This document shows positions 3,911-50,723 of a stretch of 64,000 nt of DNA, piece by piece. This DNA comes from Obrimoposthia wandeli (lineage: Eukaryota). The stretch is from NCBI GenBank assembly GCA_977020255.1, contig CDROCS010002105.1:1-64000 (forward strand), read 5' to 3'. Numbering within the stretch: position 1 is the stretch's first letter; each line of letters opens with the position of its first letter. Made by a program: the position numbers and the translations under genes. The notes below the pieces were generated by a model that did no database searches, had not been told where the DNA came from, and worked only from the letters and a program-made list of their open reading frames with translations.

Positions 3911-3916
3911 AGTCTA

Positions 3917-4234: not shown

Positions 4235-4248
4235 TCTACTTGTCGTTG

Positions 4249-4303: not shown

Positions 4304-4572
4304 CTGTGGTAATTTTAATCAAATCAATAGAGAGCAGTTCGTAGTGACGCTGATTCTATCGATTTTTTTTGTCGTGTTAGCGGCTTTTTTACGTCTGGTG
4401 TTTGTCCCGCCTAAAGTACGTTTTCCCTATAAACAAGATTAACGATATAAGGTAATCGAAACACATGAGGGTATGCCTGTTACTCTTGGTTCATGTATAA
4501 TGTGATCCAAGTTCTGCTGTAAGTGCACCTAGCCTAACAGTTTGTTTATTTTTCATATACCTGAGACGTCAA

Positions 4573-5835: not shown

Positions 5836-5927
5836 AGCGTAAAGCAAAACAGAATACAGATGGCCTGATAAAACAGTAATTTAATGGTTCGTCGAAAGGC
5901 TTATCCAAAAAGATTTATCGAACAATT

Positions 5928-5975
5928 CACCAATTCCTCTTCAAGCTATAAAGCTTAGGGGAGTTGGTGTTTTTT
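5928..5975 (+). terminator. Intrinsic terminator between the convergent helicase and T1SS genes
   Basis: caccaattcct...gggagttggtg stem followed by T7. Confidence 0.7.
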
Positions 5976-6014
5976 TGTTCTGTTCTGTTCTGTTCTTATC
6001 GGTTTTGAAGTGCC

Positions 6015-8156: not shown

Positions 8157-9760
8157 ACGGCAACCTTCTTCATAAATTTATGTTTAACCAAGCGGGTGTC
8201 GAGTTGTCCTAACTTGTTGCTGACGATTACGCAGATGAAGTTGTTAGATTTCGGTGTAATACACGATAATAATAAACGGCCAAATTGTTCGTCGTACACC
8301 ATGTCGATATCGTCAATCATTAATACTGGCTTGTTACTGAGTAAGGCTCGAACAACCAATAATGCGAATAATACCTGACGCGAAAATGGCAACTGAGTAT
8401 GGCTTGATATTTGGGTATAAAAACCATTTTTTAACCCATCAATTTTGTTTTTTATCGCTAAGTTTTCGCATAGGGAAAAAGCGGCATTATTCAAGTGAGG
8501 GCGAAAACAGGTGAGGTTATCGATGATAGACCCTTCCACTAATGTCGTATTTTTATCGACTTTGATAATGTCATTTCGCCATGTGGCATAATCAATGTCT
8601 GTTTGTGGTTGTTCATTAACGTGAATCGTAATCGCATCATCGTGTGTATCACGCGTTAGGCACCGTAGATGGTGGCTTTTTCCCGTACCGCTCACGCCAG
8701 TGAAAAGGTGAATATTTCCCTTAGAGAGTACAATGTTTTGTGGGGGCGTTATTCTATCTGTTGGCTGAGTACTCAGCGTGAGAGTATTCACGGGCTGTAA
8801 GGGAATATCCTCATGGGCTGTGGCTTCCAATTCCAGTAATTCACAAATACGTTCAATGTGCATTTGGTTTACCCGCCAGCGACTCAAGGTTTTCATAACT
8901 TGCTGGTAAGGGGCAAAGTAGCGATTGGTAAGAAGAATAACGGCAGCCATGACCCCTTGGCTAATTTCCAGGTTGATTACAGCACGCGCACACAGCACCA
9001 CCACTAAGGCGACAGAGAGTTGTTGAATTAACTGTAACGTGAGGTTAAATGATGACTCAAGACGTTCGTACTCAATGCTTTGGGTTTCACGTTCGCCGAT
9101 CATTTCGACCATCACACTTTCTACGCGGTATTCCATGGTGCGGCTTTTAATGTCTAATGGATTGGAGACGATTTCGATGATTTTGGAGCTGGTAAGCCCT
9201 TCGATATCCGATCGTTGTGATAAAACATCGACACGCTTTTGAGCAAGAAAGCGTGCAGTAACAAATAAAATGCTTGAAGCGATGATCAACGCTAAGCCTG
9301 CCCACATATTAATTAAGAAAATGATTAATACAGTAATCGCGCTAGTGCCGCCGTTGATCAGGGCTTTGATCGATTCCCCCCCGAAAAACTGTTTAATATC
9401 AGGGATTGTCGAAATACGTTCGAGGTATTCCCCCATTTCCAGACGATTAAAACGTTCAATATTAGCAGCACAAATAGCAAGAAAAACACTGTTGGTAAGC
9501 TGGCTTTCAAACCGCTTCATAATGACAGACACCAAGTATTCTTCTTGGCGTTTTAATTGGTAGTCGATAAAGATAGCCGTCAAAATAACCGCAAACAACA
9601 ACATCAATGAGTTGGTGGATTGATTCGGTAAGATACGGTCAAAAATAATCAAAATAGAAAAAGGTAACACCAAACCGAGCAGCGTGGTCATGATGGTAGA
9701 AAAGACCAAGTACACTTTATCTATAGGGCTTATTTTACGAGTAAATAAATGACTTTTCAT
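8153..9760 (-). CDS. Second T1SS ABC transporter subunit, 535 aa (TMD + degenerate NBD)
   Basis: IFDRILPNQ TMD motif; Walker A GVSGTGKS; Walker B VLMIDD; 4-bp overlap with the next gene. Confidence 0.85.
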   Translation of the reverse strand: MKSHLFTRKISPIDKVYLVFSTIMTTLLGLVLPFSILIIFDRILPNQSTNSLMLLFAVILTAIFIDYQLKRQEEYLVSVIMKRFESQLTNSVFLAICAANIERFNRLEMGEYLERISTIPDIKQFFGGESIKALINGGTSAITVLIIFLINMWAGLALIIASSILFVTARFLAQKRVDVLSQRSDIEGLTSSKIIEIVSNPLDIKSRTMEYRVESVMVEMIGERETQSIEYERLESSFNLTLQLIQQLSVALVVVLCARAVINLEISQGVMAAVILLTNRYFAPYQQVMKTLSRWRVNQMHIERICELLELEATAHEDIPLQPVNTLTLSTQPTDRITPPQNIVLSKGNIHLFTGVSGTGKSHHLRCLTRDTHDDAITIHVNEQPQTDIDYATWRNDIIKVDKNTTLVEGSIIDNLTCFRPHLNNAAFSLCENLAIKNKIDGLKNGFYTQISSHTQLPFSRQVLFALLVVRALLSNKPVLMIDDIDMVYDEQFGRLLLSCITPKSNNFICVIVSNKLGQLDTRLVKHKFMKKVAV

Positions 9761-36438: not shown

Positions 36439-36458
36439 TTAATTAAACGTTCAATTAA
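36439..36458. promoter_or_regulatory. BetI operator
   Basis: TTAATTAAACGTTCAATTAA has one mismatch to the perfect TTAATTGAACGTTCAATTAA palindrome; 20 bp upstream of betI. Confidence 0.85.
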
Positions 36459-36478: not shown

Positions 36479-37072
36479 ATGCCGAAGGTAGGGATGCCAG
36501 AAATACGTCGACCTCAGCTTGTCGAGGCCACAATGAGCGTTATTGATGAGGTTGGATTATCGAATGCAAGTGTCGCCTTGATTAGTCGAAAGGCAGGTGT
36601 ATCTCCAGGGATCATTAATCACTATTTTGGTGGTAAACATGGTTTGTTGGAAGAAACAATGCGTACGGTGTTACGTCAGTTATCGACCTCATCAATCGAG
36701 CATCTTCGTGCTGTTGACCGTAATGATGTAAAGGCAAGAATCAAGGCAATTGTCGCCGCTAATTTCGATAGCTATCAAGTCGAAAGCAAAGTTGTTAAGA
36801 CATGGGTGGCATTTTGGGCACAGTCAATGCACGATGGCGATCTGCATCGACTCCAGCGTGTTAACGAACGCCGCCTCTTGTCACACCTTAGCTATGAACT
36901 CAAGCAAGTTTTACCCGCTGAACAAGCCCTCTTTGTCGCGCAGGGAATTGCCGCACTAATCGATGGGATCTGGCTGCGAGGCGCGCTGAATCCTAAAGGG
37001 ATTTGCCCCGATAAAGCACAACAGATCATTTCCGATTATCTGGAAAAGCAACTCGCCCCTTACTTGGACTGA
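36479..37072 (+). CDS. betI: Choline-responsive TetR-family repressor
   Basis: [15 protein letters not shown]-terminus; [11 protein letters not shown]. Confidence 0.96.
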
Positions 37073-37112: not shown

Positions 37113-38576
37113 TTGATGAAAATGAAGTCCCTTTACATCCATGGTCAAGCAACTGATGTTTCATCAGGTGAAACCTTTATAACCGCTAACCCTGCAACGG
37201 GCGAACAATTGGCTGAAATCGGTCAAGCATCAACTCAAGATGTTGATCGTGCTATTGCATCAGCGCAAGCTGGCTTCAAAGTGTGGTCAGCAATGAGTGG
37301 TATTGAACGCGGTCGTATCTTGATGCGTGCGGTGGCCATTCTTAGAGAGCGTAATGACGAGCTGGCTGAATTAGAAGTTAAAGATACAGGTAAACCGATC
37401 CAAGAAGCGATCGAGGTCGATATTGTTACGGGTACGGATGTTATCGAGTATTACGCGGGGCTTGCCGCTGCGATTCAAGGGCAGCAACAAGATTTGGGGC
37501 ATGGTCAGTTTTTCTATACCCGCCGTGAACCACTAGGCGTTTGTGCTGGTATCGGCGCGTGGAATTACCCTATTCAGATTGCAATGTGGAAATCGGCACC
37601 AGCATTGGCGGCGGGTAATGCGATGGTGTTTAAGCCTTCGGAAGAAACGCCGTTGTCGGTATTGAAATTAGCAGAAATCTTCACCGAGGCTGGTGTGCCT
37701 GATGGCGTTTTTAACGTTGTACAGGGGGATTATCGTGTCGGTCAAATGCTGTCTCGTCACCCAGACATTGCCAAAATTTCGTTCACTGGTGAGTCAGGCA
37801 CTGGTAAGAAAGTAATGGCAGATGCTGCCGGTACGCTCAAAGATATTACGATGGAGCTGGGTGGGAAATCACCACTGATTGTGTTTGATGATGCCAAGCT
37901 AGATAACGCGGTTTCTGCCGCTATGTTAGCTAATTTTTACACCCAAGGCGAAGTCTGCACCAATGGTACCCGTGTGTTTGTACATGATGCCATTTACGAT
38001 GATTTCATAGAACAACTAGCACACCGAACCAACAAATTGGTTATCGGTAATCCTGCTGATATGTCGACCCAAATCGGTGCGCTTATCTCTGGTGAACACC
38101 TGGGAAAAGTACTCGGTTTTATTCAAGCGGGTAAAGAGTCTGGCGCGCGTCTTATCTGCGGGGGTAGCCGTGAAACGGGCAACGGACTCGATAAGGGATA
38201 TTTTGTTCAACCGACCATTTTTGCCGATTGTACTGATGACATGCCTCAGGTACAGGAAGAGATTTTTGGTCCTGTAATGTCGATACTGCGATTTACTGAT
38301 GAAGATGAAGTAATCGAGCGAGCAAATGCAACGCAGTACGGACTTGCCGCTGGGCTATTTACCCAAAACCTTTCTCGCGCTCATCGTGTTATTGCTCAAA
38401 TAGACGCGGGAATTTGTTGGGTGAACACTTGGGGCGGTTCGCCGGCTCAAATGCCAGTGGGTGGCTACAAACAATCTGGCATTGGTCGTGAAAATGGCAT
38501 AGACACACTTAACCATTACACCCAGAACAAGAGCGTAATGATTGAGCTTGGCGATCTTGAGTGTCCTTACGATTAA
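37113..38576 (+). CDS. betB: Betaine aldehyde dehydrogenase
   Basis: [31 protein letters not shown]. Confidence 0.96.
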
Positions 38577-38593: not shown

Positions 38594-40288
38594 ATGAACA
38601 CAACGTATGATTACATCATTGTCGGCGCGGGATCTGCTGGCTGTGTGCTGGCCGACCGTTTAAGCGCTTCGGGCGAACACCATATCCTACTGCTTGAAGC
38701 AGGTGGAAGTGACAAAAGCATCTTCATTCAAATGCCAACCGCATTGTCATACCCAATGAACAGTGAAAAATATGCATGGCAATTCGAAACCCAACCTGAG
38801 GCTGGTCTTGATAACCGAAGCCTACATTGTCCGCGAGGGCGTGTACTGGGTGGTAGTTCTTCGATTAATGGCATGGTGTATGTGCGTGGCCATGCTTGCG
38901 ATTATGATGAGTGGGTAGAGCAGGGTGCTGCGGGCTGGAGTTATCAAGAGTGTCTGCCGTATTTCCGCCGTGCTGAATCATGGATTCGTGGAGAAAATGC
39001 CTACCGCGGAGGCGATGGTCCTGTTGGCACATGTAATGGTAACGACATGGAACTTAACCCGCTGTATCAAGCCTTTATTGATGCAGGGCAACAAGCTGGC
39101 TACCCGAAAACTGATGACTATAACGGTTATCAGCAAGAAGGTTTTGGTCCTATGCATATGACGGTCGATAAAGGTGTACGAGCCTCTACCTCAAATGCCT
39201 ACCTGCGCCGCGCTATGAAGCGCAGTAACCTAACCGTGAAAAAAGGTGTGGTAACCCGCAAGGTACTGATCAAAAACAAGCAAGCGATAGGTGTTGAAAT
39301 AGAAATCAGCGGCAAAGTGCAGTCTGTTTATGCTAACACTGAAGTGCTGCTGTCGGCGGGCTCTGTCGGTTCCCCTCAGCTTCTTCAGTTATCAGGTATT
39401 GGTCCTAAAGCGGTATTAGAACAAGCAGGAATTGCTGTTGAACAAGACTTGCCGGGTGTTGGTGAGAACCTGCAAGATCACCTTGAAGTTTATTTCCAAT
39501 ATGCCTGTCACCAGCCAATTACTCTAAACAGTAAGCTGGGGCTGATTAGCAAAGGTTTAATTGGCACGCGTTGGATACTGAAAAAAGATGGTTTAGGCGC
39601 AACCAACCACTTTGAATCATGCGCCTTTATTCGCTCTCGTGCGGGGCTGAAATGGCCAAACATTCAATATCACTTCTTACCTGCAGCTATGCGATATGAC
39701 GGCCAAGCCGCCTTTGATGGTCATGGTTTCCAAGTGCATGTAGGTCCGAATAAACCGCAAAGCCGTGGTCGTATTTGGATAACATCGGCCGATCCGCACC
39801 AAAAACCAAAGATTGAATTCAACTACATCAGCACCGAACAAGATAAGCAAGACTGGCGCGATTGCATTCGCCTAACGCGTGAAATATTGGCTCAGCCAGC
39901 CATGGACGATTATCGTGGCGAAGAGATTCAGCCTGGGATTGATATTACCAGTGATGAAGCGATGGATGCTTGGGTTCGCCAAAATGTAGAAAGCGCCTAC
40001 CACCCGTCTTGCACCTGCAAAATGGGAGCAGATAACGATCCAATGACAGTGCTTAATCAAGATTGCCAAGTTCGAGGAATCGAGTCTTTACGAGTGATCG
40101 ACTCTTCTGTTTTCCCGACAATACCTAATGGCAACCTTAATGCCCCGACCATCATGGTAGCCGAAAAGGCAGCAGATGCCATCTTAGGAAATTCACCACT
40201 GGCACCATCAAGCGCACCGACGTGGATCGCACCGCAATGGGAAACAGAACAACGTAATGGTGCCGCTCAACGCCCAGCGTTTCCTTAA
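38594..40288 (+). CDS. betA: Choline dehydrogenase (GMC oxidoreductase)
   Basis: [42 protein letters not shown]. Confidence 0.97.
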
Positions 40289-40456: not shown

Positions 40457-41407
40457 ATGAAGACGAATATAGCCATTAAACACACAATTATCGGTAGTAC
40501 AGCTTTATTATTAAGTTTTTCTGCATCAACGGCCTTTGCCGCTCAATGCGACACGGTACGTTTCTCTGATGTAGGTTGGACAGATATTACTGCAACAACC
40601 GCGATTACCAGCGAAGTGCTTAAAGGGCTTGGTTACCAAACATCAACGCAGCTGCTGTCTGTACCTGTCACCTATTCTTCTATGGCAAACAAAGATATCG
40701 ATGTTTTTTTAGGTAACTGGATGCCGACAATGGAAGCAGACATTGCCAAATATCACAAAGATGGTTCAGTTGAAACCGTTCGCGCTAACTTAGAAGGGGC
40801 GAAATACACCCTTGCTGTACCCAAGTATGTTTACGATGCTGGTGTACGTAGCTTTGCCGACCTAGCAAAACACAAAGATGAATTCCGCGGGCGTATCTAT
40901 GGTATCGAACCGGGTAACGATGGTAATCGCCTGATCCAAGACATGCTCGATCAGAATGCATTTGATCTGAAAAGCTTCCGCTTAGTCGAATCAAGTGAAG
41001 CAGGCATGATGTCGCAAGTAAAACGTTCGGTTAACCGCGAGCAATGGATCGCCTTTTTAGGCTGGGCACCTCACCCAATGAACAGCAACTTTGACATGGT
41101 TTATCTAGACGGCGGTGATGACTTCTTTGGTCCTAATTATGGTGGGGCGAGTGTCCATACCAATGTTCGCCAAGGCTATTTGGAAACGTGTTCGAATGTT
41201 GGTCAACTATTGCAAAACTTGAGCTTTAGTTTGGAAATGGAAAGCCAATTGATGGGTAACATTTTAGACGACAAAGCTAAACCAGAGGCTGCCGCAAAAG
41301 CGTGGCTAAAAGCTAACCCGCAAGTATTAGAACAATGGCTAAATAAAGTAACGGCGCGTGATGGCAGCAATGCTGATGAAGCTGTGAAGACTTATCTGAA
41401 TATTTAA
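40457..41407 (+). CDS. proX: Choline/glycine betaine ABC transporter substrate-binding protein (ChoX-like)
   Basis: DVGWTDI, FLGNWMP, YGIEPGNDGN, FLGWAPHPMN. Confidence 0.92.
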   Translation: MKTNIAIKHTIIGSTALLLSFSASTAFAAQCDTVRFSDVGWTDITATTAITSEVLKGLGYQTSTQLLSVPVTYSSMANKDIDVFLGNWMPTMEADIAKYHKDGSVETVRANLEGAKYTLAVPKYVYDAGVRSFADLAKHKDEFRGRIYGIEPGNDGNRLIQDMLDQNAFDLKSFRLVESSEAGMMSQVKRSVNREQWIAFLGWAPHPMNSNFDMVYLDGGDDFFGPNYGGASVHTNVRQGYLETCSNVGQLLQNLSFSLEMESQLMGNILDDKAKPEAAAKAWLKANPQVLEQWLNKVTARDGSNADEAVKTYLNI

Positions 41408-41535: not shown

Positions 41536-42384
41536 ATGGACTTTATTACAGAGCACAAGATCCCATTAGGCGATTGGATGGCAACCTTCGTGGATTGGCT
41601 AACCTATAATGCCGCAGGATTTTTTGACTCGCTTTCATACACCCTTGAATCAATAATCATGCTATTGGTTGAACTGTTCAAATGGTTCCCGCCAGCAGTG
41701 CCCATTGTCATGACTGCCTTGTTGGCGTGGTTTCTTCATCGAAGCCTTTCATTGGTCATCTTTGTTGTTGCAGCATTACTACTGATCATGAACCTTGGTT
41801 ACTGGGAAGAAATGCTAGAGACCCTTGTTCTGGTATTAAGTGCGACGATGATTTCGTTATTGGTGGGAGTGCCCGTAGGGATTGTGGCGGCACATAAACC
41901 TTGGGTGTATACCGTTTTGCGCCCGATACTTGATTTAATGCAGACAATACCGACATTTGTTTATCTTATTCCCACCTTGGTGCTGTTTGGTTTAGGGGTT
42001 GTTCCCGGCCTTATCTCTACCATTATTTTTGCCATTGCCGCCCCAATACGCCTGACCTATCTAGGCATTAGCCGAGTACCGGAAGAACTGGTCGAGGCGG
42101 GTAAAGCGTTCGGTGCCAGCCGAATGAAGTTGTTGTTCAAGGTTGAGCTTCCGGCGGCAATGCCAAACATTATGGCAGGGGTAACGCAGTGTATTATGTT
42201 ATCGCTGTCTATGGTGGTGATTTCGGCACTGGTTGGTGCTGATGGTTTGGGCAAACCAGTCGTTCGCGCCCTAAACACCGTGAATATTTCTCAGGGATTT
42301 GAAGCAGGGCTCGCTATCGTTTTGGTTGCGATTATCTTGGATCGCCTATGTAAAACACCAACCAGTCAGCGCAGAGAGGGATAA
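41536..42384 (+). CDS. proW: Choline/betaine ABC permease
   Basis: LDLMQT.PTFVYLIP; EAGKAFGA (EAA motif). Confidence 0.93.
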   Translation: MDFITEHKIPLGDWMATFVDWLTYNAAGFFDSLSYTLESIIMLLVELFKWFPPAVPIVMTALLAWFLHRSLSLVIFVVAALLLIMNLGYWEEMLETLVLVLSATMISLLVGVPVGIVAAHKPWVYTVLRPILDLMQTIPTFVYLIPTLVLFGLGVVPGLISTIIFAIAAPIRLTYLGISRVPEELVEAGKAFGASRMKLLFKVELPAAMPNIMAGVTQCIMLSLSMVVISALVGADGLGKPVVRALNTVNISQGFEAGLAIVLVAIILDRLCKTPTSQRREG

Positions 42385-42386
42385 CC

Positions 42387-43589
42387 ATGAGTGCTATTAG
42401 TATTAAAAATTTGGATGTCATCTTTGGTCAACAGACAACCCAATCATTAGCCTTGCTAGATAATGGCAAAAGCCGTCAGGAAATTATTGATGCTACCGGC
42501 GATGTGGTGGGCGTGCATGATGTTAGCCTTGATATCGAAAAGGGGGAAATCTGCGTATTGATGGGCTTATCGGGTTCAGGAAAATCGAGCTTACTGCGTG
42601 CGATTAATGGATTAAATACCGTAACCCGCGGCTCGCTGAATGTTCAGGATGGCGACCAGTTTATTAATCTCGCGAATTGCGACAAGACAGCGTTGCGTCA
42701 CTTGCGTACGAATCGTATTTCGATGGTCTTTCAGAAATTTGCCTTAATGCCTTGGCTGTCAGTTTTAGATAACGCCGCATTTGGTCTGGAGATGCAAGGG
42801 ATCAGCAAAGCAGAGCGCCGTCGCCGTGCAGAAGAAATGCTGGAAATGGTTGGCTTGGCTGAATGGAAAGATAACTATCCTCACGAGTTGTCGGGGGGCA
42901 TGCAACAACGAGTAGGATTGGCGCGCGCATTTACTATGGATAGCGATATCTTGCTGATGGATGAACCTTTTTCTGCGCTTGATCCCCTGATTAGAAGTCA
43001 ACTTCAGGATGAGCTGCTCGAATTGCAGCGTCAGCTGAATAAAACCATCGTATTCGTCAGCCACGATTTGGATGAAGCGCTGAAGCTGGGTAATAAAATT
43101 GCCATTATGGAGTCGGGTCGTTTGATCCAGCACGGTAAACCGGAAGAGATCGTACTTAACCCGAATTCAGCATACGTTGCGGAGTTTGTGGCCCACACTA
43201 ACCCGTTGAATGTGTTATGTGGTCGTTCTTTGATGACAGATGCAGCTACGCTGGAACGACAGGATAGTAAACTGGTGCTAAGCCAGCATGATCAAACCTA
43301 TATCGGCACTGATCATCAAGGACATGTTACTTCGGTTACCCGTCAAGGTAAGGCATTACCATTGCATTTATGGCAAGCGGGAGACTGCTTTGAGGGATTG
43401 AAACAAGATAGCCTAGTGATAACCAATCCGGATATATCAATGCGGGAAGGTTTGGAAATTCGTTATCGAACGGGGCAACCTGTTCTGTTGGCCGAGGATG
43501 GGCCATTGATTGGTGTATTGGGAGACAATGATTTCTATCACGCTTTGTTAGGTAAACATATCTCATTAGAAACCGAAACCAGCACATAA
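42387..43589 (+). CDS. proV: Choline/betaine ABC ATP-binding protein
   Basis: GLSGSGKS, LSGGMQQRV, LMDEPFSALD, FVSHD. Confidence 0.94.
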   Translation: MSAISIKNLDVIFGQQTTQSLALLDNGKSRQEIIDATGDVVGVHDVSLDIEKGEICVLMGLSGSGKSSLLRAINGLNTVTRGSLNVQDGDQFINLANCDKTALRHLRTNRISMVFQKFALMPWLSVLDNAAFGLEMQGISKAERRRRAEEMLEMVGLAEWKDNYPHELSGGMQQRVGLARAFTMDSDILLMDEPFSALDPLIRSQLQDELLELQRQLNKTIVFVSHDLDEALKLGNKIAIMESGRLIQHGKPEEIVLNPNSAYVAEFVAHTNPLNVLCGRSLMTDAATLERQDSKLVLSQHDQTYIGTDHQGHVTSVTRQGKALPLHLWQAGDCFEGLKQDSLVITNPDISMREGLEIRYRTGQPVLLAEDGPLIGVLGDNDFYHALLGKHISLETETST

Positions 43590-43766
43590 CTCGACCCCTA
43601 CGATCGAAAGCGCGGAGTATGCCTCAATAGCCCTTAAATATACGGGGAAGGTTTACCTGCGCGTTACCTAAGAGGTGACTTTTATCTGTCGCCTAGCGGT
43701 AAGAATAATCGCCCTCAGCAAGACACATTTTGGATATATAGACGGAACCCAAGGAATTAACAATCG

Positions 43767-45545
43767 ATGGGAAACATATTTAGTCGTCAACAAAATTTAC
43801 CAATAATGCCGGTGCCTGCATTAGATGAAACATGTCATAAACTGATTGAATGGGCAGAGCCTTTATTAACACAAGAAGAGCATATCAGAAGCAGAAAAGT
43901 CATTGAACAGTTTATTCAGCCTGGCGGAGAAGGTGAAGTATTACAAAATGAGCTGATTGAATGGGCTAATTGTCACACTCACTCTAATTGGTCTGCACCC
44001 GCTTGGCGAGCTCTTTATCTGGAATCTCGAGATTCTCTGGCGATTAACAGCAACGTATTTTATTACCTAAAAAGTAGGCATGATGAAAAGGCCTGCACAC
44101 AGGCAAATATCGCCGCCGCGCTTATTGTTAGCATTTATAATTTTATCTCTTTGGTTGATAAAAAAGAGCTCACGGTTGACATGCAAAAAGATATGCCGCT
44201 TTGCATGAATCAGTACAACAATCTTTTTTCCTCAACAAGAATAGCGCAGCAGGGGATGGATGAACTCAAAGTGTCATCGTCTAGACAGCATATTGTGATA
44301 ATGCATAAACAGCGTATATATAAAGTTGATATTCTGGATGAAAAAGGAAATATCAGGTCGCTCTCAGCGATTGAATCCGATCTTGATTACATTGTCGCTA
44401 TCCCAGAGAAAGGACAAAACGTAGGCGTTCTAACCACAATGCCACGAGATGCTTGGGCAGAAAGCAGGGCAAACTTGCTTCAGACATCGGTTAATAATAG
44501 AGACGCGATGACAGCCATTGAAGACGCAGCTTTTGCTTTGTGTCTGGATGAAAATACCCCAGAAGAGATAACCGAAGTATCAAAACAGTTACTGCATGGC
44601 GATGGCAAGGATCGCTTTTTCGATAAGTCGCTGCAATTTATCGTCTTTAAAAATGGTAAAACGGGGATCAATTTTGAGCATACAGGGGTGGATGGCTCCG
44701 TTATGCTTCGTTTGGTTGCACATATCTATGACACTATTGACAAGGTTTGTTTTGATGAAAAGGATGTTTCTGCTAAGACTGAGGGGGGGCTGGCCCCGAG
44801 TGTTGAAGAAATTGAGTTTGATTTAGATGATGTATTGGTACAGACGATTCGTGCAGCCATCGATTTGTTCATTCAACACTCGGCCAATAATCAGATTAGG
44901 GTTTTGAATTTCACTCAGTTTGGTAAAAATCAGATCAAGCAATTTGGCGTGAGTCCCGATGCATTCGTTCAGTTGGCGTTACAATTAGCAGAACATAAGA
45001 TTTATGGAAAGTGCTACAGTGCTTATGAAGCCGTAATGACCAGAACGTTTATTGACGGGCGTCTTGATGTTTTGTATACCGTTACGCCTGAGTCAATGGC
45101 GTTTATTCACAAAATAAGTGACCCCGATTGTAGCGTTCAGGCTAAGATCGATTCACTCATTCAGGCAACACGAACGCACGTTGAAAGGGCAAATGAGTGT
45201 CGATTGGGCCATGGGATTTACACCCATTTACTCGCGCTTAAATACCGTTATAAAGTAGCAGGCCGTGACATCGGAATTGATACGCTTCCAGAGATATTTA
45301 CCAAAGGAGGATATCAGGCTCTGACTCACAGTGTGGTTTGTACTAGTACCACGTCAGAATACGGCGTAGAGCTCGCAGGTTACGGGCCAATTGTCGATGA
45401 TGGTTACGGAATCAGATACTTTAAGCGAAATGATTCCATCTGCTTCAATATAACAAGTCGAACCGATATGCAGGACAAACTCGAGCAGATGAGAATCTAT
45501 ATCGAGCAATCGCTGCTTGAAATGGCAGATTTGATGCGAAGCTGA
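43767..45545 (+). CDS. Choline/carnitine O-acyltransferase family protein; residue pattern is choline-acetyltransferase-like
   Basis: LP.MPVP.L, RFFDKSLQFIV, FEHTGVDG (catalytic His305), SPDAFVQLALQLA, CTS, YGPIVDDGYG. Confidence 0.9.
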   Translation: MGNIFSRQQNLPIMPVPALDETCHKLIEWAEPLLTQEEHIRSRKVIEQFIQPGGEGEVLQNELIEWANCHTHSNWSAPAWRALYLESRDSLAINSNVFYYLKSRHDEKACTQANIAAALIVSIYNFISLVDKKELTVDMQKDMPLCMNQYNNLFSSTRIAQQGMDELKVSSSRQHIVIMHKQRIYKVDILDEKGNIRSLSAIESDLDYIVAIPEKGQNVGVLTTMPRDAWAESRANLLQTSVNNRDAMTAIEDAAFALCLDENTPEEITEVSKQLLHGDGKDRFFDKSLQFIVFKNGKTGINFEHTGVDGSVMLRLVAHIYDTIDKVCFDEKDVSAKTEGGLAPSVEEIEFDLDDVLVQTIRAAIDLFIQHSANNQIRVLNFTQFGKNQIKQFGVSPDAFVQLALQLAEHKIYGKCYSAYEAVMTRTFIDGRLDVLYTVTPESMAFIHKISDPDCSVQAKIDSLIQATRTHVERANECRLGHGIYTHLLALKYRYKVAGRDIGIDTLPEIFTKGGYQALTHSVVCTSTTSEYGVELAGYGPIVDDGYGIRYFKRNDSICFNITSRTDMQDKLEQMRIYIEQSLLEMADLMRS

Positions 45546-45737: not shown

Positions 45738-45766
45738 AAAAAAAGCCGCATTATGCGGCTTTTTTA
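45738..45766. terminator. Bidirectional intrinsic terminator
   Basis: A7-gccgca-ttat-gcggc-T6. Confidence 0.85.
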
Positions 45767-45782: not shown

Positions 45783-46583
45783 TTATAAGCCTTTGATATT
45801 TTCTGCTTCTAGCTCTTTAAAGTACTTCACTGTTTTCACTTTAAGCTCTTGTTGTGCTGCTTCGTCAGCAACCATAACCGCTTTAGTGTGAAGTTGAAGT
45901 GCAGATATCGTCCACATGTGGTTTACGCTACCTTCAATTGCCGCCTGAAGAGAAAGTGCTTTGTTATGACCTTGAATTAAGATCATCACTTCTTCAGAAT
46001 CTAATAGTGTTGCAACACCAATAGTTAGTGCGTATTTAGGCACCTGTGTGATGTCGCCACCAAAGAAGCGAGAGTTTGCAATACGTGTATCTTCAGTCAG
46101 TGTTTTAATACGTGTACGAGAAGATAGTGATGATGCAGGTTCGTTAAATGCGATGTGACCATCGTTGCCTACGCCACCCATGAATAAGTTGATTTTACCG
46201 TAAGACTTAATCTTATCTTCGTATGCTTTGCAGTGACCATCGATATCGTCAGTTTGACCATCTAATAGGTTAATATTTTCTGCTTTAATATCAACATGGT
46301 TGAAGAAGTTAGTGTGCATGAATGTACGGTAAGATTCTGGATGGTTTGGTTCAATACCCACGTACTCATCCATGTTGAATGTAACAACGTTTTCAAAGCT
46401 AACTTCGCCTGCTTTGTACAGTTCGATTAATATTTTATAAGTCGATAGAGGCGTGCTGCCTGTAGGTAAACCCAGGACAAAAGGGCGATCTGCTGTTGGA
46501 TTAAAATCATTGATACGCTTAACGATATGACGAGCTGCCCATGCGCCAACTTGAGTAGCATTACTTAATGGAATTAATCTCAC
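45783..46583 (-). CDS. nagB: Glucosamine-6-phosphate deaminase
   Basis: [29 protein letters not shown]. Confidence 0.98.
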
Positions 46584-46620
46584 TTTGATACCTCTATAAA
46601 CAGAATATTAAATTTAAAAT

Positions 46621-46643
46621 CATTATTTGCATTGTAAAATAAG
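46621..46643. promoter_or_regulatory. Putative NagC operator
   Basis: CATTATTTGCATTGTAAAATAAG is a 23-bp AT-rich quasi-palindrome about 40 bp upstream of nagB. Confidence 0.55.
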
Positions 46644-46898
46644 TTTTGAATTAGCGCCAATGATTTAAAACAAAAAAAGCGATCTATTGTGAAACGTTCA
46701 CATTTTATATTCGCAAACAGTAACGGCTTACGGTTAATTATATGCATTTAAGGCTTTAACTTTAGGGGTATTGCCGTGAGGGTATGCAAGGGGGCTATTC
46801 GAGCTGATGAGGATATTATTCGAGTAGAAAGGGTACTTTCGGGTTTTGATGGAACAAGGAAATAAGCAGAGTCTAAAAACCATCCATGGAGTTAAGAA

Positions 46899-47429
46899 TC
46901 AAAATGGACTATCACGATCAAGCTCATTACAGATGCCAGCAATAGCAAGAGCAAGCGCTGACTTAATGATCTGCTCTTGACGAGCTAACTGCATTTGATA
47001 AAAAATAAGGTCAACATCGTCACCTGGAGAGGCAATTTCAAGTTGTACCACGCCCATGTTTTGTACCGCATGCATTTTTTTGATGGGTTGTAATATTTTA
47101 GGGTCAGTAAAACAGTAATCATTACCATCGCTGTTAAGAAAATCACGCAGTTTAAGAAAAGCATCGATATCTTGGTAAATATTGTGTGAAACAACGCCTA
47201 ACCCCAGCAATAGCTTAAGGCGAACCGTTATTTCACCTAAGGGTCCAGAGTTATCCAGTAAAGGGCCGACCACAGACTTAACTGCGAAATCGTCTTTACG
47301 AAATACTCGTTGGATTAAGCTATCGACAGCTTCTTCAAACACTTCGACAGAAGTGATAATGAAACCTCGCACATTAGATGTATCACTTAATCGTTCAAGG
47401 ATGTCTGACTCTTGGTCACTTTGTGCCAT
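46899..47429 (-). CDS. mtlR: Mannitol operon repressor
   Basis: VFRKDDFAVKSVVGPLL..SGPL...VRLKLL; follows mtlD. Confidence 0.93.
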   Translation of the reverse strand: MAQSDQESDILERLSDTSNVRGFIITSVEVFEEAVDSLIQRVFRKDDFAVKSVVGPLLDNSGPLGEITVRLKLLLGLGVVSHNIYQDIDAFLKLRDFLNSDGNDYCFTDPKILQPIKKMHAVQNMGVVQLEIASPGDDVDLIFYQMQLARQEQIIKSALALAIAGICNELDRDSPF

Positions 47430-47533
47430 AACCTGTGTATTCTCTTTCGTAACAGGGAAGGGCAGTTATTGCCCTTCCAAGTCTTTCCACATTCGGATTT
47501 GAGTAAATATCTTTACTTAATCACGATGAGTAA

Positions 47534-48679
47534 TCAGCTCAATTGTAGAAAAATAGTTTCAATAGTCTTCGCTTCCTTGCTGTCAGCGTCGATACCTGTG
47601 TAATGCGCCAATGTTGGGCGAAGGCCTTTCTCTTTTAACGAGGTTTGTAGCTCGACTGCCTGTGGATCTGATTCGTTGGTGTACATAAATGCAGCAGCAA
47701 TACCTTTAAGTAAGGTTTTGTTCTCTGTTCCGTATTCAATTGTACCTAGCAATGGTTTGATTAATCTATCATTTTCTCCTAATTTACGGATTGGTTGACG
47801 GCCAACACGGTCAATTTCGTCACGTAAATAAGGGTTTGCGAAGCGACCTAGAATTTTTTCAATGTAGGCATCGTGCACTTCACGCTCAAAACCATAACGT
47901 TTGATTAATACTTCGCCACTTTCTTGCATTGCTGCTTTTACTTGCTCACGAATCTCACTGTCTTCAATGGCATCACGTATGGTTTCATGACCTTTTAATG
48001 CGCCTAGGTAGGCTGTCATGATGTGACCAGTATTTAGCGTAAACAATTTACGCTCAACGAATGCCATCAAATTGTCAGTCATTTCCATCCCTTCAATCGC
48101 TGGGATATCACCTTTGAATTGCTGTTTATCAACGATCCACTCGCTGAAGCTTTCAACGGTAACCTCTAACGGGTCATTCGCTGCTTCTGAAGGTGGAACG
48201 ATACGGTCTACTGCAGAATCAACGAAGCCAACTAACGCGTCTGCACGAGCGTGATATTGCTTATCAAGGTGTTTATATACTTCATTTTTTAGGTGTGTCG
48301 TCCCACGTACCATGTTCTCACAAGCTATGATGTTTAATGATTTATCATTGCTTGCCTCAAAGCGCTGTGTAAGACCTGTTGCGATTGTTTTCGCAATGAT
48401 ATCGAGTACGTTAGGTCCAACAGCCGTCGTTACTAAATCTGTGTACACAATGCGATCGATAACGTCTTGGCTTGCTGAGTTAACAGCTGTTACGTGAGTG
48501 ACTGTGTCAACTTGGCATTGGCTGCCAACCACTTTTACTTTGTAAGATTGATCATGACTTAATTGATCAACAAGTGGTTTATCAACGTCTGCAAATGTAA
48601 CCGCTACATTTGCATCAGAAAGTAATTTACCAATAAAACCACGACCGATATTACCTGCGCCAAAATGAACTGCTTTCAT
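47534..48679 (-). CDS. mtlD: Mannitol-1-phosphate 5-dehydrogenase
   Basis: [40 protein letters not shown]. Confidence 0.97.
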
Positions 48680-48770
48680 AATCTTTACCTACCAATAATT
48701 AATTTTAAAAAGTAATTTTAGAATGGGGTGAGGCTAAACTGGGTGTCTAACCTCGGGGTCACTCAGCGTA

Positions 48771-50723
48771 TTAAGCGGCTTTTTGGCCAGCAAGAATACT
48801 TAGCACTTCGTTGACATCTGTCGTGCTAGTTAGACGCTCGATAGCATCTGGATCGTCGAGTGCATTCGTGATGGTAGTGATGACTTGAATGTGTTCATCG
48901 TTCTTCGCTGCAATACCAATTACTAGCTTTGCTAGGTCGTCTTCATCATCGCTGAATAGAACACCTGCAGGGTACTGACAAATTACGATACCAGTTTTGA
49001 TAACACGGTCTTTTGCTTCAACTGTACCGTGTGGAACCGCGATAGATTCGCCTAAGTATGTTGATACGAGTTTTTCACGGTCGAACATCGCGTTTACGTA
49101 GTCTGGTTCTGCGTAACCGAGTTTAACCAGTTGTTCGCCAGCATAACGTATTGCTTGTTCTTTCGTTGTTGCAGTACATCCAAGGTGAATATTTTCAGCT
49201 TGAATTTGAAATACTTGCTTCTCTTGTGGCTCAAAACTATCTTCGTTTGCAGCAACAGGTGATACTTTTACCATTGCAGAGTCGTTTGCTGCGTCAGGGC
49301 TGTTCGCTGCCACAATGCTCGTGACTAAATCGTTGTAGATTTGGCTATCTAGGAAGTTAGTTAGTGAAATATGTTTCGCGTTTGCAGCATGTTTACGAGC
49401 ACGGTCTGTTAAATCTTTATGAGTAATCACGATATCTACCTCTTGCGGCAAGCTATTAATGGCACAGTTAGTTACGCTAATCTTGAGTCCAGCATCTTGA
49501 ATTTTCTTACGCAGCAGGCTTGCACCCATTGCACTCGAACCCATGCCTGCATCACAAGCAACAATGATGTTGCGTACGTCAGCCATGTTTATGTTGCTTT
49601 TATCTTTAGCTGTAACTTCAGCGGAGTTGCCTTTAGCGCCTGCTTTCATGCCCTTCATTTTTGAAGTTGCAGAAGCAAGGGTTGTATCGTCGTCTTCATC
49701 GGTTGTGCGTTGTGTTTTCATTAGTAATGCAGCAACAGAGAATGAAACAGCTGTTGACGCGATTACTGACAGAATAACGCCAACAAATGAGGCTTTCGGT
49801 GTCATCAATAAGATGGCGAAGATTGAACCAGGAGATGCTGGTGAAACAATGCCTGCGTTGAATAATGTAAGCGTGAATACACCCGTCATACCGCCAGCAA
49901 TTACCGCTAGAATCAAACGTGGATTCATCAGGATGTACGGGAAGTAAATTTCGTGGATACCACCGAAGAAGTGGATAATCGATGCGCCACCAGCAGTTTG
50001 CTTTGCAGTACCGCGACCGAATACAGTGTAAGCAAGCAAAACACCAAGGCCAGGACCTGGATTTGCTTCAATCAAGAAGAAAATTGATTGACCGGTTTCG
50101 TTAGCCTGTTGGATACCTAACGGCGAGAAGATACCGTGGTTAATCGCGTTATTTAGGAATAGAATTTTTGCTGGTTCAACAAAGATTGAAGTTAAAGGTA
50201 ACAAACCTGCTTCTACAAGGAAGTTAACACCGCCCGCCAAACCACCAGATAAGATTTTTACAAATGGACCAATCATGTAAAACGCGATGATTGCGCAGAT
50301 CATACCTACAATACCGGCAGAGAAGTTGTTTACTAACATCTCGAAACCGCTTTTTACTTTACCGTCTACCCAGTTATCGAACTTCTTGATTGCCCAGCCA
50401 CCCATAGGGCCGACCATCATTGCGCCCATGAACATTGGGATGTCTGTACCGACAATAACACCAATTGTTGTTATTGCACCGACAACCGCACCACGGTCAC
50501 CGCCCACTAATTTACCACCGGTATAACCGATTAGAAGTGGTAATAAGTATGTAATCATAGGGCCAACAAGTTTTGCTAATTCCTCGTTTGGAAACCAGCC
50601 TGTTGGAATGAATAAAGCAGTGATAAAGCCCCATGCGATGAACGCACCGATATTAGGCATTACCATATTAGATAAGAAGCGACCAAAATTTTGTACCTTG
50701 ATCTTTGCATCTGGTGATATCAT
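48771..50723 (-). CDS. mtlA: PTS mannitol EIICBA
   Basis: FGRFLSNMVMPNIGAF, GGIHEIYFPY, VACDAGMGSSA, IAVPHG. Confidence 0.97.
   Translation of the reverse strand: MISPDAKIKVQNFGRFLSNMVMPNIGAFIAWGFITALFIPTGWFPNEELAKLVGPMITYLLPLLIGYTGGKLVGGDRGAVVGAITTIGVIVGTDIPMFMGAMMVGPMGGWAIKKFDNWVDGKVKSGFEMLVNNFSAGIVGMICAIIAFYMIGPFVKILSGGLAGGVNFLVEAGLLPLTSIFVEPAKILFLNNAINHGIFSPLGIQQANETGQSIFFLIEANPGPGLGVLLAYTVFGRGTAKQTAGGASIIHFFGGIHEIYFPYILMNPRLILAVIAGGMTGVFTLTLFNAGIVSPASPGSIFAILLMTPKASFVGVILSVIASTAVSFSVAALLMKTQRTTDEDDDTTLASATSKMKGMKAGAKGNSAEVTAKDKSNINMADVRNIIVACDAGMGSSAMGASLLRKKIQDAGLKISVTNCAINSLPQEVDIVITHKDLTDRARKHAANAKHISLTNFLDSQIYNDLVTSIVAANSPDAANDSAMVKVSPVAANEDSFEPQEKQVFQIQAENIHLGCTATTKEQAIRYAGEQLVKLGYAEPDYVNAMFDREKLVSTYLGESIAVPHGTVEAKDRVIKTGIVICQYPAGVLFSDDEDDLAKLVIGIAAKNDEHIQVITTITNALDDPDAIERLTSTTDVNEVLSILAGQKAA

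What the first reader, a model, noticed from the sequence alone, without database searches (positions are those of the whole stretch)
43767..45545. Candidate bacterial choline acetyltransferase: eukaryote-type acyltransferase lacking the carnitine-binding residues
Seen: a 592-aa carnitine/choline acyltransferase-family protein with catalytic FEHTGVDG (His305, codon at 44679), YEAVMTRTFIDGRLDV, GHGIYTHLLAL, CTS and AGYGPIV. Established: in CrAT/CPT the carnitine carboxylate is held by the Ser of YES, the Thr of GRT(D/E)T and the Arg of DRHL. ChAT has GRVDN and DNHL instead, and swapping these positions shifts ChAT toward carnitine. Here all three positions are lost (Ala422, Leu433, Thr486), and Tyr539 matches the ChAT YGP. 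Inference: the enzyme prefers choline or another uncharged amino-alcohol. It could make acetylcholine, or run in reverse to harvest acetyl-CoA plus choline from host acetylcholine. The family is mostly eukaryotic with sporadic bacterial members, and I know of no characterised Vibrio enzyme.
Basis: partly seen in the sequence, partly recalled or inferred. Interest (0 to 1): 0.88.

Follow-up and report, generated by a model that had tools for sequence, protein, structure and literature searches.

The report
Bacterial choline-type acyltransferase in bet operon
A marine bacterium (Photobacterium-like, sitting as a contig in an animal genome assembly) carries a member of the carnitine/choline acyltransferase family. 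It has lost the carnitine-gripping residues independently of animal ChAT and is wired into the choline uptake and oxidation operon, so it probably interconverts choline and acyl-choline esters, a step not yet described in bacterial choline metabolism.

Summary
Window 43767-45545 encodes an intact 592-aa PF00755 enzyme (E 1e-167) with the catalytic His, the oxyanion Ser and the CoA-binding lysines. It lacks CrAT Thr465 (here Leu433) and Arg518 (here Thr486).

The gene belongs to a small monophyletic bacterial clade of marine Gammaproteobacteria and anaerobic Bacillota. Four positions separate this clade from all other bacterial members: Thr465 to I/L/M, Arg469 to Y/H, Arg518 to T/S/G/A, and Ser552 to Cys.

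An AU test rejects grouping the clade with ChAT (p 9e-5), so the resemblance is convergent.

Context points to choline:
- betA, betB, betI or a CudC regulator lies within 10 kb in 20 of 38 clade loci and 0 of 39 others.
- At least five gene arrangements occur across two phyla.
- The window's "ProX" is a ChoX choline/acetylcholine-binding orthologue.
- A carnitine-type homologue on another bacterial contig of the same assembly sits beside a gamma-butyrobetaine dioxygenase-like gene.

Choline as the substrate is well supported. The direction (ester salvage or acetylcholine synthesis) and the acyl length are not settled. I found no characterised bacterial member.

The parts
36442..36455 (.). BetI operator-like palindrome ATTAAACGTTCAAT, 37 nt upstream of the betI start
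   Evidence: The same box stands upstream of betI in Photobacterium loci L004-L007, L014 and L033.
36479..37072 (+). betI, choline-binding TetR-type repressor
   Evidence: NCBIfam NF001978 and TIGR03384 equivalogs, 268 and 241 bits.
37113..38576 (+). betB, betaine-aldehyde dehydrogenase
   Evidence: NF009725 equivalog, 843 bits.
38594..40288 (+). betA, choline dehydrogenase
   Evidence: TIGR01810 equivalog, 785 bits. Pfam GMC_oxred_N and GMC_oxred_C.
40457..41407 (+). choX (annotated proX in vibrios): periplasmic choline-binding protein of the ABC importer
   Evidence: TIGR03414 choline ABC substrate-binding protein, 477 bits against a cut-off of 379. Matches S. meliloti ChoX structures 2reg/2rin at E 1.5e-122.
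41536..42384 (+). choW/proW, ABC permease
   Evidence: Pfam BPD_transp_1.
42387..43589 (+). choV/proV, ABC ATPase
   Evidence: Pfam ABC_tran.
43590..43766 (+). 177-nt spacer between choV and the acyltransferase, consistent with read-through from the operon (not shown)
   Evidence: The consensus scan found no sigma-70-like promoter here. The scan for the BetI-box consensus (up to 2 mismatches) found no box here. The weak hairpin with a T-run at 43663-43679 is shared only by L033 and is absent from L004, L006, L007, L008 and L014. The spacer is only about 80 nt in L014.
43767..45545 (+). 592-aa choline-type member of the carnitine/choline O-acyltransferase family
44679..44681 (+). His305 codon, catalytic base (CrAT His343)
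   Evidence: Invariant in alignment A1.
44925..44939 (+). Lys387 to Lys391 (FGKNQIK), equivalent to the CrAT CoA-phosphate ligands Lys419 and Lys423
   Evidence: Alignment. Nearly invariant in A1.
45030..45032 (+). Ala422 (CrAT Ser454). Not diagnostic.
45063..45077 (+). Leu433 to Tyr437 (GRLDVLY). Leu433 replaces Thr465 and Tyr437 replaces Arg469.
   Evidence: Position 433 is I/L/M in 38 of 38 clade members and Thr in 29 of 29 other bacterial members compared. Position 437 is Y/H in the clade and Arg in 29 of 29 others.
45222..45224 (+). Thr486, in place of the carboxylate-pairing Arg518
   Evidence: T/S/G/A in 38 of 38 clade members and Arg in 26 of 29 others. ChAT has Asn here.
45339..45347 (+). 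Cys525-Thr526-Ser527 (CrAT Ser552-Thr553-Ser554). The oxyanion Ser is kept and Ser552 is replaced by Cys.
   Evidence: Cys in 38 of 38 clade members, Ser in 29 of 29 others.
45375..45383 (+). Ala537-Gly538-Tyr539: the acyl-gate residues plus the Tyr shared with ChAT
   Evidence: Aligns to CrAT Met564-Phe565-Phe566, ChAT Cys-Cys-Tyr and CPT2 Gly-Gly-Phe.
45738..45766 (.). Bidirectional intrinsic terminator (A-run, GCCGC-ATTAT-GCGGC, T-run) shared with the convergent downstream gene
   Evidence: Read directly from the sequence.

Best explanation
The gene encodes a cytoplasmic, CoA-dependent choline O-acyltransferase that catalyses acyl-CoA + choline <-> acyl-choline + CoA. It uses the family's His-base mechanism (His305, oxyanion Ser527, CoA lysines 387 and 391).

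The pocket for the trimethylammonium head is kept. The pocket for the carnitine carboxylate has been filled in and stripped of two arginines.

The gene is the last gene of, and probably co-transcribed with, the choline-inducible betIBA-choXWV operon.

Most likely physiological role (inferred): the enzyme runs in the ester-cleaving direction. It takes imported acetylcholine or other short- to medium-chain choline esters, passes the acyl group to CoA, and releases free choline for BetA and BetB to oxidise to glycine betaine. This would be a thiolytic counterpart of choline sulfatase BetC in betICBA operons.

My sub-confidences are:
- acceptor is choline or a near analogue: about 0.65-0.7
- net direction is salvage, given that: about 0.6
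For: Shown:
- The catalytic apparatus and fold are intact.
- Thr465 and Arg518 are lost, and Arg469 and Ser552 are also changed. These are the only sharply discriminating polar or charged columns between this clade and 29 other bacterial homologues.
- The trimethylammonium-pocket equivalents are retained (Trp80, Tyr84, Tyr539, Ile542).
- The clade is monophyletic.
- Under strict thresholds, betA, betB, betI or CudC lies within 10 kb in 20 of 38 clade loci against 0 of 39 non-clade loci. Any choline or quaternary-amine gene is present in 28 of 38 against 5 of 39.
- At least five different arrangements occur: betIBA-choXWV-ACT; betIBA-BCCT-like-ACT; divergent BCCT-like/betA/betB(/betI) <> ACT; BCCT-like next to ACT alone; and, in Clostridia, opuAC>ACT>cudC.
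- The regulator next to ACT in Clostridia is a CudC equivalog.
- The window's binding protein is a ChoX orthologue. ChoX binds choline with high affinity and acetylcholine with medium affinity (PMC2635726).
- BetI-box-like palindromes lie upstream of the gene in two Shewanella loci that have no bet genes nearby.
- Counter-example that fits the rule: the carnitine-type homologue on contig C2843 keeps GRTE and ERY and sits beside a gamma-butyrobetaine dioxygenase-like gene and an OpuA-type transporter.

Inferred: the BetC precedent for a choline-ester-processing enzyme encoded with bet genes (PMC5870055, PMC12442346). An operon that both oxidises and acylates choline makes more sense if the acyl step lies upstream of choline.
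Against: - No biochemical data exist for any bacterial member.
- Four of five Clostridial carriers searched have no BetB orthologue, so feeding glycine-betaine synthesis cannot be the universal role.
- Bacteria usually free choline or carnitine from esters with hydrolases (PMC13631058), and the ChAT equilibrium favours ester formation (my own knowledge).
- In two Vibrio genomes the gene follows a pdu operon instead.
- Ten of the 38 clade loci show no choline-related neighbour.
- The window itself has no BetI box directly upstream of the gene, and co-transcription is not shown.
Confidence: 0.45

Rival explanations
1. Net synthase. The enzyme makes acetylcholine (or another acyl-choline) from imported choline and acyl-CoA. 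The product would serve as a signal to the animal host, as a sink that buffers the acetyl-CoA/CoA ratio as CrAT does in mitochondria, or as a store of choline.
For: - The residue evidence for choline is the same as for the best explanation.
- The ChAT reaction equilibrium favours synthesis (my own knowledge).
- Clostridial carriers mostly lack a choline-oxidation route, so acylation of imported choline could be the end point there.
- Bacterial acetylcholine production from choline is real and host-relevant, although the known enzymes are hexapeptide-repeat proteins (PMC13391359).
- The carriers are animal-associated or sediment bacteria.
Against: - The enzyme would compete with BetA for choline inside one operon.
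- A cationic ester is a poor compatible solute.
- No exporter is conserved next to the gene.
- The open acyl gate (Ala-Gly) is not what an acetyl-specific enzyme needs.
Confidence: 0.2
2. The acceptor is another hydroxylated compound that is not choline. This would parallel fungal PKS-linked carnitine-acyltransferase domains, which acylate polyols. The linkage to choline genes would then reflect shared regulation or transport only.
For: - Loss of the carboxylate site shows only what is not bound.
- Fungal cAT domains show that the fold accepts non-quaternary alcohols (PMC10901484).
- Ten of the 38 clade loci lack choline-related neighbours, and two follow a pdu operon.
Against: - The trimethylammonium-pocket residues are conserved.
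- The linked genes are choline-specific equivalogs (BetI, BetA, ChoX, CudC), in two phyla and in several arrangements.
Confidence: 0.12
3. It is still a carnitine acyltransferase (or acts on another carboxylated hydroxy-betaine) and binds the carboxylate through different residues.
For: - Automatic annotation reads 'carnitine O-acetyltransferase'.
- The best PDB sequence hits are CrAT and CPT2.
- The clade gained several Lys or Arg residues whose location in the fold I could not check.
- OpuAC and BCCT systems often carry carnitine as well.
Against: - Thr465 and Arg518 co-occur in most other bacterial members (26 of 29) and in most of the best family-wide representatives sampled.
- Both are lost together only here and in ChAT, along with some deviant lineages that I did not study.
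- No carnitine-pathway gene lies near any clade member. By contrast, a carnitine-type homologue sits beside a GBBH-like gene.
- A hydrophobic Leu/Ile at position 465 mirrors the ChAT Val.
Confidence: 0.08

Closest known systems
Animal choline O-acetyltransferase (ChAT, EC 2.3.1.6; PDB 1q6x, 1t1u, 2fy2)
   Same: - Same fold and family (TM about 0.88-0.91).
- Same catalytic His and STS Ser.
- A hydrophobic residue replaces Thr465 (Val in ChAT, Leu/Ile here).
- A non-basic residue replaces Arg518 (Asn in ChAT, Thr/Ser/Gly/Ala here).
- Tyr stands in the (F/Y)GP motif.
   Different: - Only 28% identical, no closer than CrAT, CPT2 or COT.
- Phylogenetically separate: the AU test rejects a joint clade at p 9e-5, so the resemblance is convergent.
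- ChAT keeps YES, Arg469 and Ser552. This enzyme has YEA, Tyr437 and Cys525.
- The acyl gate is Cys-Cys in ChAT and Ala-Gly here.
- This enzyme sits in a bacterial operon; ChAT is neuronal.
Carnitine acetyl-, octanoyl- and palmitoyl-transferases (CrAT, COT, CPT1/2)
   Same: - Best sequence and fold matches (E about 1e-73, TM up to 0.94 to CPT2).
- Same mechanism and CoA site.
- YEA as in CPT1.
- Small gate residues as in CPT2 and COT.
   Different: - Lacks Thr465 and Arg518, the carboxylate ligands of carnitine, and also lacks Arg469.
- Linked to choline genes, not to carnitine genes.
Carnitine-type bacterial PF00755 proteins (Desulfobacterales, Synergistota, Campylobacterota and others; uncharacterised), including the copy on contig C2843 of this assembly
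   Same: - Nearest relatives in the tree.
- 29-41% identical.
- Often next to OpuAC-type ABC importers.
   Different: - They keep GRTE and (D/E)R(H/Y).
- None has betA, betB, betI or cudC nearby (0 of 39).
- The C2843 copy neighbours a gamma-butyrobetaine dioxygenase-like gene.
Bacterial hexapeptide-repeat choline acetyltransferases BbChAT and PpChAT (Bifidobacterium, Pediococcus; PMC13391359)
   Same: The proposed chemistry is the same (acetyl-CoA + choline), and it depends on choline.
   Different: The fold is unrelated: left-handed beta-helix of the Maa/LacA type against the two-domain CAT-like fold. [quoted passage not shown]
Choline-O-sulfatase BetC in betICBA operons
   Same: It has the same operon logic: an enzyme encoded with bet genes that turns a choline ester into choline for BetA and BetB (PMC5870055, PMC12442346).
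   Different: BetC is a hydrolytic sulfatase of the alkaline-phosphatase superfamily. The step proposed here is a CoA-dependent transfer that conserves the acyl group.

Membership tests
Pfam PF00755 choline/carnitine O-acyltransferase family | Full-length match to the family profile above the curated cut-off | tested here: met
   559 bits against a cut-off of 22.3; residues 14-580 on profile positions 1-573 of 574.
Pfam PF00755 choline/carnitine O-acyltransferase family | Catalytic His in the EH motif, oxyanion Ser of STS, and CoA-phosphate lysines | tested here: met
   His305, Ser527, Lys387 and Lys391 align to His343, Ser554, Lys419 and Lys423 of mouse CrAT. They are invariant or nearly invariant in A1.
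Pfam PF00755 choline/carnitine O-acyltransferase family | Two-domain CrAT-like fold | tested here: met
   AF2 model with pLDDT 88 and pTM 0.88. Foldseek TM 0.88-0.94 to CrAT, CPT2, COT and ChAT.
Carnitine acyltransferases (CrAT/COT/CPT) | Thr of GRT(D/E)T (Thr465) hydrogen-bonding the carnitine carboxylate | tested here: not met
   Leu433 in the window protein; I/L/M in 38 of 38 clade members.
Carnitine acyltransferases (CrAT/COT/CPT) | Arg of DRHL (Arg518) pairing with the carboxylate | tested here: not met
   Thr486 in the window protein; T/S/G/A in 38 of 38 clade members.
Carnitine acyltransferases (CrAT/COT/CPT) | Ser of YES (Ser454) | tested here: inconclusive
   Ala422 here. However, CPT1-like and carnitine-type bacterial sequences also have Ala, so the position does not discriminate.
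Animal ChAT (EC 2.3.1.6) | Specificity signature: hydrophobic residue at 465, non-basic residue at 518, Tyr in YGP | tested here: met
   Leu433, Thr486 and Tyr539 against Val, Asn and Tyr in 1t1u and 2fy2.
Animal ChAT (EC 2.3.1.6) | Common descent with ChAT (orthology) | tested here: not met
   The protein nests in bacterial carnitine-type lineages. The tree holding the clade together with a ChAT-type sequence is 73.6 lnL units worse, p-AU 9e-5.
Animal ChAT (EC 2.3.1.6) | Acetyl-CoA:choline transferase activity | not testable with these tools
   This needs an enzyme assay.
Hexapeptide-repeat bacterial ChATs (BbChAT/PpChAT) | Left-handed beta-helix fold of the Maa/LacA clade | tested here: not met
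   Pfam gives only PF00755, and the fold matches are CrAT-like.
BetI/choline regulon | Operon or divergon linkage with bet or choline-uptake genes, conserved across taxa | tested here: met
   20 of 38 against 0 of 39 loci, in at least five arrangements and two phyla.
BetI/choline regulon | BetI operator controlling the gene; induction by choline | tested here: inconclusive
   In the window the box lies only at betI (36442-36455). Boxes lie upstream of the gene in L012 and L016 and in the shared divergent regions of L010, L013 and L015. No expression data with and without choline were available.

The most novel reading that the evidence does not exclude
A second, evolutionarily independent bacterial route to acetylcholine. 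Under this reading a PF00755 enzyme has converged on the ChAT active site, is induced by choline through BetI or CudC, and lets animal-associated marine bacteria (Photobacterium, Vibrio, Shewanella, Psychromonas) and gut or sediment Clostridia either make or thiolytically consume the host neurotransmitter and other acyl-cholines. Cholinergic chemistry would then be tied directly to osmoprotection.
Probability: 0.2. Interest if true: 0.85.

Novelty: new variant of a known kind. Interest (0 to 1): 0.68.

Why it matters
- **A missing step in bacterial choline metabolism.** Described routes to free choline are hydrolytic (sulfatase, phosphatase, esterase). A CoA-dependent choline/acyl-choline transferase built into bet operons would add an energy-conserving entry or exit step and a new class of osmoprotectant precursors.
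- **A natural experiment in specificity.** The same two carboxylate ligands were lost in animals (ChAT) and in bacteria. Carnitine-type sister enzymes and matching gene neighbourhoods (bet against GBBH-like) serve as built-in controls.
- **Relevance to host-microbe cholinergic signalling.** The only bacterial ChATs characterised so far belong to an unrelated fold.
- **Annotation.** The clade is currently labelled only 'choline/carnitine O-acyltransferase' or 'carnitine O-acetyltransferase', and NCBIfam has no model for it.

Tried and rejected
- **YEA as evidence.** Rejected. CPT1-like host exons and carnitine-type bacterial enzymes share it.
- **First synteny count.** The initial count treated ALDH and Fe-ADH hits in L022 and L023 as betB and gbsB. 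Pfam showed they are pduP and pduQ of a standard pduOPQSTUVW operon. Counts were redone with strict score thresholds.
- **CutC or EutB next to that Vibrio copy.** Not adjacent.
- **BetI box or promoter directly upstream of the gene in the window.** None found. The hairpin at 43663-43679 is shared only by L033 and is not conserved in the other Photobacterium loci.
- **Compensating basic residue in three dimensions.** Not testable, because model coordinates are not exposed. Only a list of clade-specific Lys/Arg gains could be made.
- **Expression.** No isolate RNA-seq was served. Two marine-sediment metatranscriptomes hold short contigs over the gene, mostly 95-98% identical in X19 and mostly below 95% in X22. 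Contigs in an RNA library do not prove transcription or co-transcription.
- **Literature.** The structural papers on CrAT and ChAT could not be fetched. Statements about which CrAT residues touch carnitine, and about the Cronin ChAT-to-carnitine swap, rest on my own knowledge. Searches for a characterised bacterial PF00755 enzyme found none.
- **Universal coupling to glycine-betaine synthesis.** Rejected. Four of five Clostridial carriers lack a BetB orthologue.
- **Origin of the family.** Whether it arose in eukaryotes or bacteria, and the direction of the Bacillota/Gammaproteobacteria transfer, were left unresolved because there is no reliable root.
Full report
**1. What is there**

Window 43767-45545 (+) is an intact ATG-started ORF of 592 codons with an AAGGAA ribosome-binding site. 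It matches Pfam PF00755 (Carn_acyltransf) end to end at E 1.4e-167.

Its best solved relatives are mouse and human CrAT, rat CPT2, rat and human ChAT and mouse COT, all at E 1e-56 to 1e-73. An AlphaFold2 model built on a 17-sequence alignment has mean pLDDT 88. The model superposes on all four animal paralogues with TM 0.88-0.94 at 24-28% identity, so it is not specifically closer to ChAT.

NCBIfam has no model for the protein. Public names are automatic: 'choline/carnitine O-acyltransferase' or 'carnitine O-acetyltransferase'.

**2. The residues**

The HMMER alignment to CrAT can be indexed exactly, because the engineered M564G and F565A chains show where residues 564 and 565 lie.

| Window protein | Mouse CrAT | Role or comment |
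|---|---|---|
| His305 | His343 | catalytic base |
| Asp309 | Glu347 | |
| Lys387, Lys391 | Lys419, Lys423 | CoA phosphate ligands |
| Tyr420 | Tyr452 | |
| Ala422 | Ser454 | carboxylate ligand in CrAT |
| Leu433 | Thr465 | carboxylate ligand in CrAT |
| Tyr437 | Arg469 | |
| Thr486 | Arg518 | carboxylate partner in CrAT |
| Cys525-Thr526-Ser527 | Ser552-Thr553-Ser554 | oxyanion Ser kept |
| Ala537-Gly538-Tyr539 | Met564-Phe565-Phe566 | acyl gate and (F/Y)GP |
| Ile542 | Val569 | |
| Trp80, Tyr84 | Trp102, Tyr107 | |

The chemistry and the CoA site are therefore intact. The aromatic and hydrophobic cradle for a trimethylammonium head is kept.

I obtained tool-derived comparators from the host animal's own exons in the same assembly and from PDB chains:
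- ChAT reads YES / GRVDN / DNHL / (F)CCYGP.
- CrAT reads YES / GRTDT / DRHL / MFFGP.
- CPT1-like exons read YEA(S/C) / GRTET / DRHL.

YEA, however, occurs in genuine carnitine enzymes and carries no weight.

**3. A discrete bacterial clade**

A pattern scan of one genome per species returned 77 bacterial loci. In their alignment the window protein groups with 37 others:
- Gammaproteobacteria: Photobacterium, Vibrio, Shewanella, Psychromonas, Moritella, Agarivorans.
- Anaerobic Bacillota: Inediibacterium, Clostridiaceae, Anaerophilus, Wukongibacter, Acidaminobacter, Eubacteriaceae, Coprobacillaceae.

All of these share YEA / GR(I/L/M)(D/E)V / non-Arg before HL / CTST / (A/V)G(Y/W)GP. Most other bacterial lineages keep GRTE and (D/E)RH. 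These include Desulfobacterales, Synergistota, Campylobacterota, Oscillospiraceae and cyanobacteria.

A column scan finds only a handful of positions that separate the two sets cleanly:

| Position (window / CrAT) | Clade (38) | Other bacterial members compared (29) |
|---|---|---|
| 433 / Thr465 | I/L/M, 38 of 38 | Thr, 29 of 29 |
| 437 / Arg469 | Y/H, 38 of 38 | Arg, 29 of 29 |
| 486 / Arg518 | T/S/G/A, 38 of 38 | Arg, 26 of 29 |
| 525 / Ser552 | Cys, 38 of 38 | Ser, 29 of 29 |

Two arginines and a hydroxyl are lost together around the old carboxylate site, and position 486 drifts among small residues. That pattern fits a site no longer under selection to bind an anion.

The clade is one side of a branch (SH-aLRT 87) nested among carnitine-type bacteria. 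The gammaproteobacterial members are nested among Bacillota.

In a family-wide sample of 50%-identity representatives there were 1,406 hits at E<=1e-30. Among the best 150, only four clusters carry this signature and one carries the ChAT signature (V/N). That one best matches solved ChATs. The bacterial clade stays monophyletic in a 144-sequence tree. The tree that forces it together with the ChAT-type sequence is worse by 73.6 lnL units, p-AU 9e-5. The ChAT-like active site is therefore convergent.

**4. Genomic context**

In the window the gene is the last of seven co-oriented genes:
- betI, preceded at 36442-36455 by the palindrome ATTAAACGTTCAAT
- betB
- betA
- an ABC importer (three genes)
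- the acyltransferase

The importer's binding protein is a choline-specific ChoX orthologue (TIGR03414 at 477 bits; E 1.5e-122 to S. meliloti ChoX). ChoX binds choline with high affinity and acetylcholine with medium affinity (PMC2635726).

The 177-nt spacer has no consensus promoter or BetI box. Its weak hairpin is shared only by L033 and is not conserved in the other Photobacterium loci compared. A strong bidirectional terminator follows the gene.

Across the clade the gene is found in these arrangements:
- after betIBA-choXWV
- after betIBA plus a 405-aa BCCT-like transporter
- divergent from BCCT-like/betA/betB with or without betI
- next to the BCCT-like gene alone
- in Clostridia, between an OpuAC binding protein and a CudC-type choline regulator (NF047500 equivalog), sometimes followed by a full Opu ABC system

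With strict score thresholds, betA, betB, betI or cudC lies within 10 kb in 20 of 38 clade loci and in 0 of 39 other loci. The clade has a single origin, so these counts are not independent events. The variety of arrangements in two phyla nevertheless argues for repeatedly maintained linkage.

BetI-box-like palindromes also lie upstream of the gene in two Shewanella loci that have no bet genes nearby. I estimate the chance expectation at about 0.003 per 800-nt region.

A useful contrast comes from the same assembly. A second bacterial contig (C2843, Campylobacterota-like) carries a carnitine-type homologue (GRTEC, GIERYF; 29% identical). It sits beside an OpuA-type importer and a gamma-butyrobetaine dioxygenase-like gene (TIGR02409 at 405 bits, just under the 415 cut-off). 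Carnitine-type residues thus go with a carnitine-forming neighbour, and choline-type residues go with choline-oxidising neighbours.

Exceptions:
- Two Vibrio genomes place the gene after pduOPQSTUVW.
- One Clostridial MAG places it before a membrane glycerophosphodiester phosphodiesterase.
- Ten clade loci show nothing choline-related.

**5. Mechanism and role**

Shown:
- The catalytic and CoA-binding apparatus is intact.
- The carboxylate ligands are lost.
- The linkage is to choline-specific genes.

Inferred:
- The acceptor or leaving alcohol is choline.
- The acyl group is uncertain. The gate residues are Ala-Gly. CrAT (acetyl) has Met-Phe, ChAT has Cys-Cys, and CPT2 (long-chain) has Gly-Gly. 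The CrAT Asp356 position is variable within the clade. Short to medium chains seem accessible.
- The direction is also inferred. An enzyme that consumes choline would compete with BetA inside one operon. An enzyme that releases choline from imported esters would sit logically upstream of BetA and BetB, as BetC does for choline-O-sulfate (PMC5870055, PMC12442346), and it would save the acyl group as acyl-CoA.

Against a universal salvage-to-betaine role, four of five Clostridial carriers lack a BetB orthologue. Known bacterial ester routes are hydrolytic (PMC13631058). Net synthesis of acetylcholine or acyl-choline therefore remains a serious rival.

**6. Distribution and setting**

- The family is rare in bacteria. 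PF00755 is absent from the 14 control genomes and present in 18 of 301 Vibrionaceae species genomes sampled.
- The window is part of a 591-kb bacterial contig in a 1.35-Gb eukaryotic assembly, whose own CrAT, ChAT and CPT genes appear exon by exon. The bacterium is a contaminant or associate of that animal, not part of its genome.
- Near-identical DNA occurs in the source organism's runs. Related DNA occurs in food, invertebrate-gut, ice, sediment and seawater metagenomes.
- Sediment metatranscriptome contigs, mostly 95-98% identical in one run (X19), cover much of the gene. This is weak evidence of expression.

**7. Novelty**

The literature I could search holds no characterised bacterial PF00755 enzyme:
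- A review of Vibrionaceae compatible-solute systems does not mention the gene.
- The 2026 study that identified bacterial ChATs found hexapeptide-repeat enzymes. It states that the pathway had been undetermined and that no mammalian-ChAT homologue was present in the B. breve genome.
- A 2026 preprint on PF00755 evolution treats opisthokonts only.

I class this as a new variant of a known enzyme kind. The substrate assignment rests on good comparative evidence, and the biochemistry is untested.

Noticed in passing
whole window; G000 contigs C2105 and C2843: The 'genome' is a 1.35-Gb, 6,912-contig eukaryotic assembly. The window is the start of a 591-kb Photobacterium-like contig. A 122-kb Campylobacterota-like contig is also present. 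Both are bacterial associates or contaminants rather than host DNA.
   Followed up: partly
L090 (G000:C2843:3001-13000) 2986-9320: A candidate bacterial carnitine module on C2843: a gamma-butyrobetaine dioxygenase-like gene, an OpuA-type ABC importer (ATPase, permease, OpuAC), and a convergent carnitine-type PF00755 acyltransferase that keeps GRTEC and ERY.
   Followed up: partly
L003:4724-5944 (-) and 14 other loci (cluster c6): A conserved 405-aa membrane protein that only weakly matches BCCT (Pfam 30 bits; the Atlas calls it 'BCCT family / choline transporter'). It accompanies betA/betB and the acyltransferase in 15 loci. It may be a short choline or choline-ester transporter.
   Followed up: partly
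L022 and L023, 1943-11779: In two Vibrio genomes the acyltransferase directly follows a pdu microcompartment operon (pduO, P, Q, S, T, U, V, W) in the position of pduX. A link to propionyl-CoA is possible, or the adjacency may be chance.
   Followed up: partly
L060-L065 (Hyphomicrobiales and other Alphaproteobacteria MAGs); L053-L054: Another divergent bacterial lineage has lost the YE motif (it reads QN) and reads GRVQS and EQH, that is Val at position 465 and Gln at 518. It sits beside HpcH-type aldolase, rhodanese and EamA genes. The Methyloligellaceae copies keep GRTE but read EQH. The substrates are unknown.
   Followed up: no
L045, L046, L039 (Synergistota): Carnitine-type homologues lie downstream of ETF alpha and beta, an FAD-linked oxidase and an Asp/Glu-racemase-like gene. 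This suggests an anaerobic hydroxy-acid or quaternary-amine pathway.
   Followed up: no
tree: The gammaproteobacterial copies are nested within Bacillota copies. Within the gammas the tree mixes Shewanella, Psychromonas, Moritella and Photobacterium. This points to lateral transfer among cold or deep-sea, animal- or sediment-associated bacteria.
   Followed up: partly
window 45783-50723 (-): Downstream on the opposite strand lie a NagB/6-phosphogluconolactonase-like gene and a mannitol operon: mtlR, mtlD and the PTS mtlA (EIICBA).
   Followed up: no
L030:11884-13659: In a Clostridiaceae MAG the acyltransferase is followed by a membrane-anchored glycerophosphodiester phosphodiesterase. Such an enzyme could release choline from glycerophosphocholine.
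   Followed up: no
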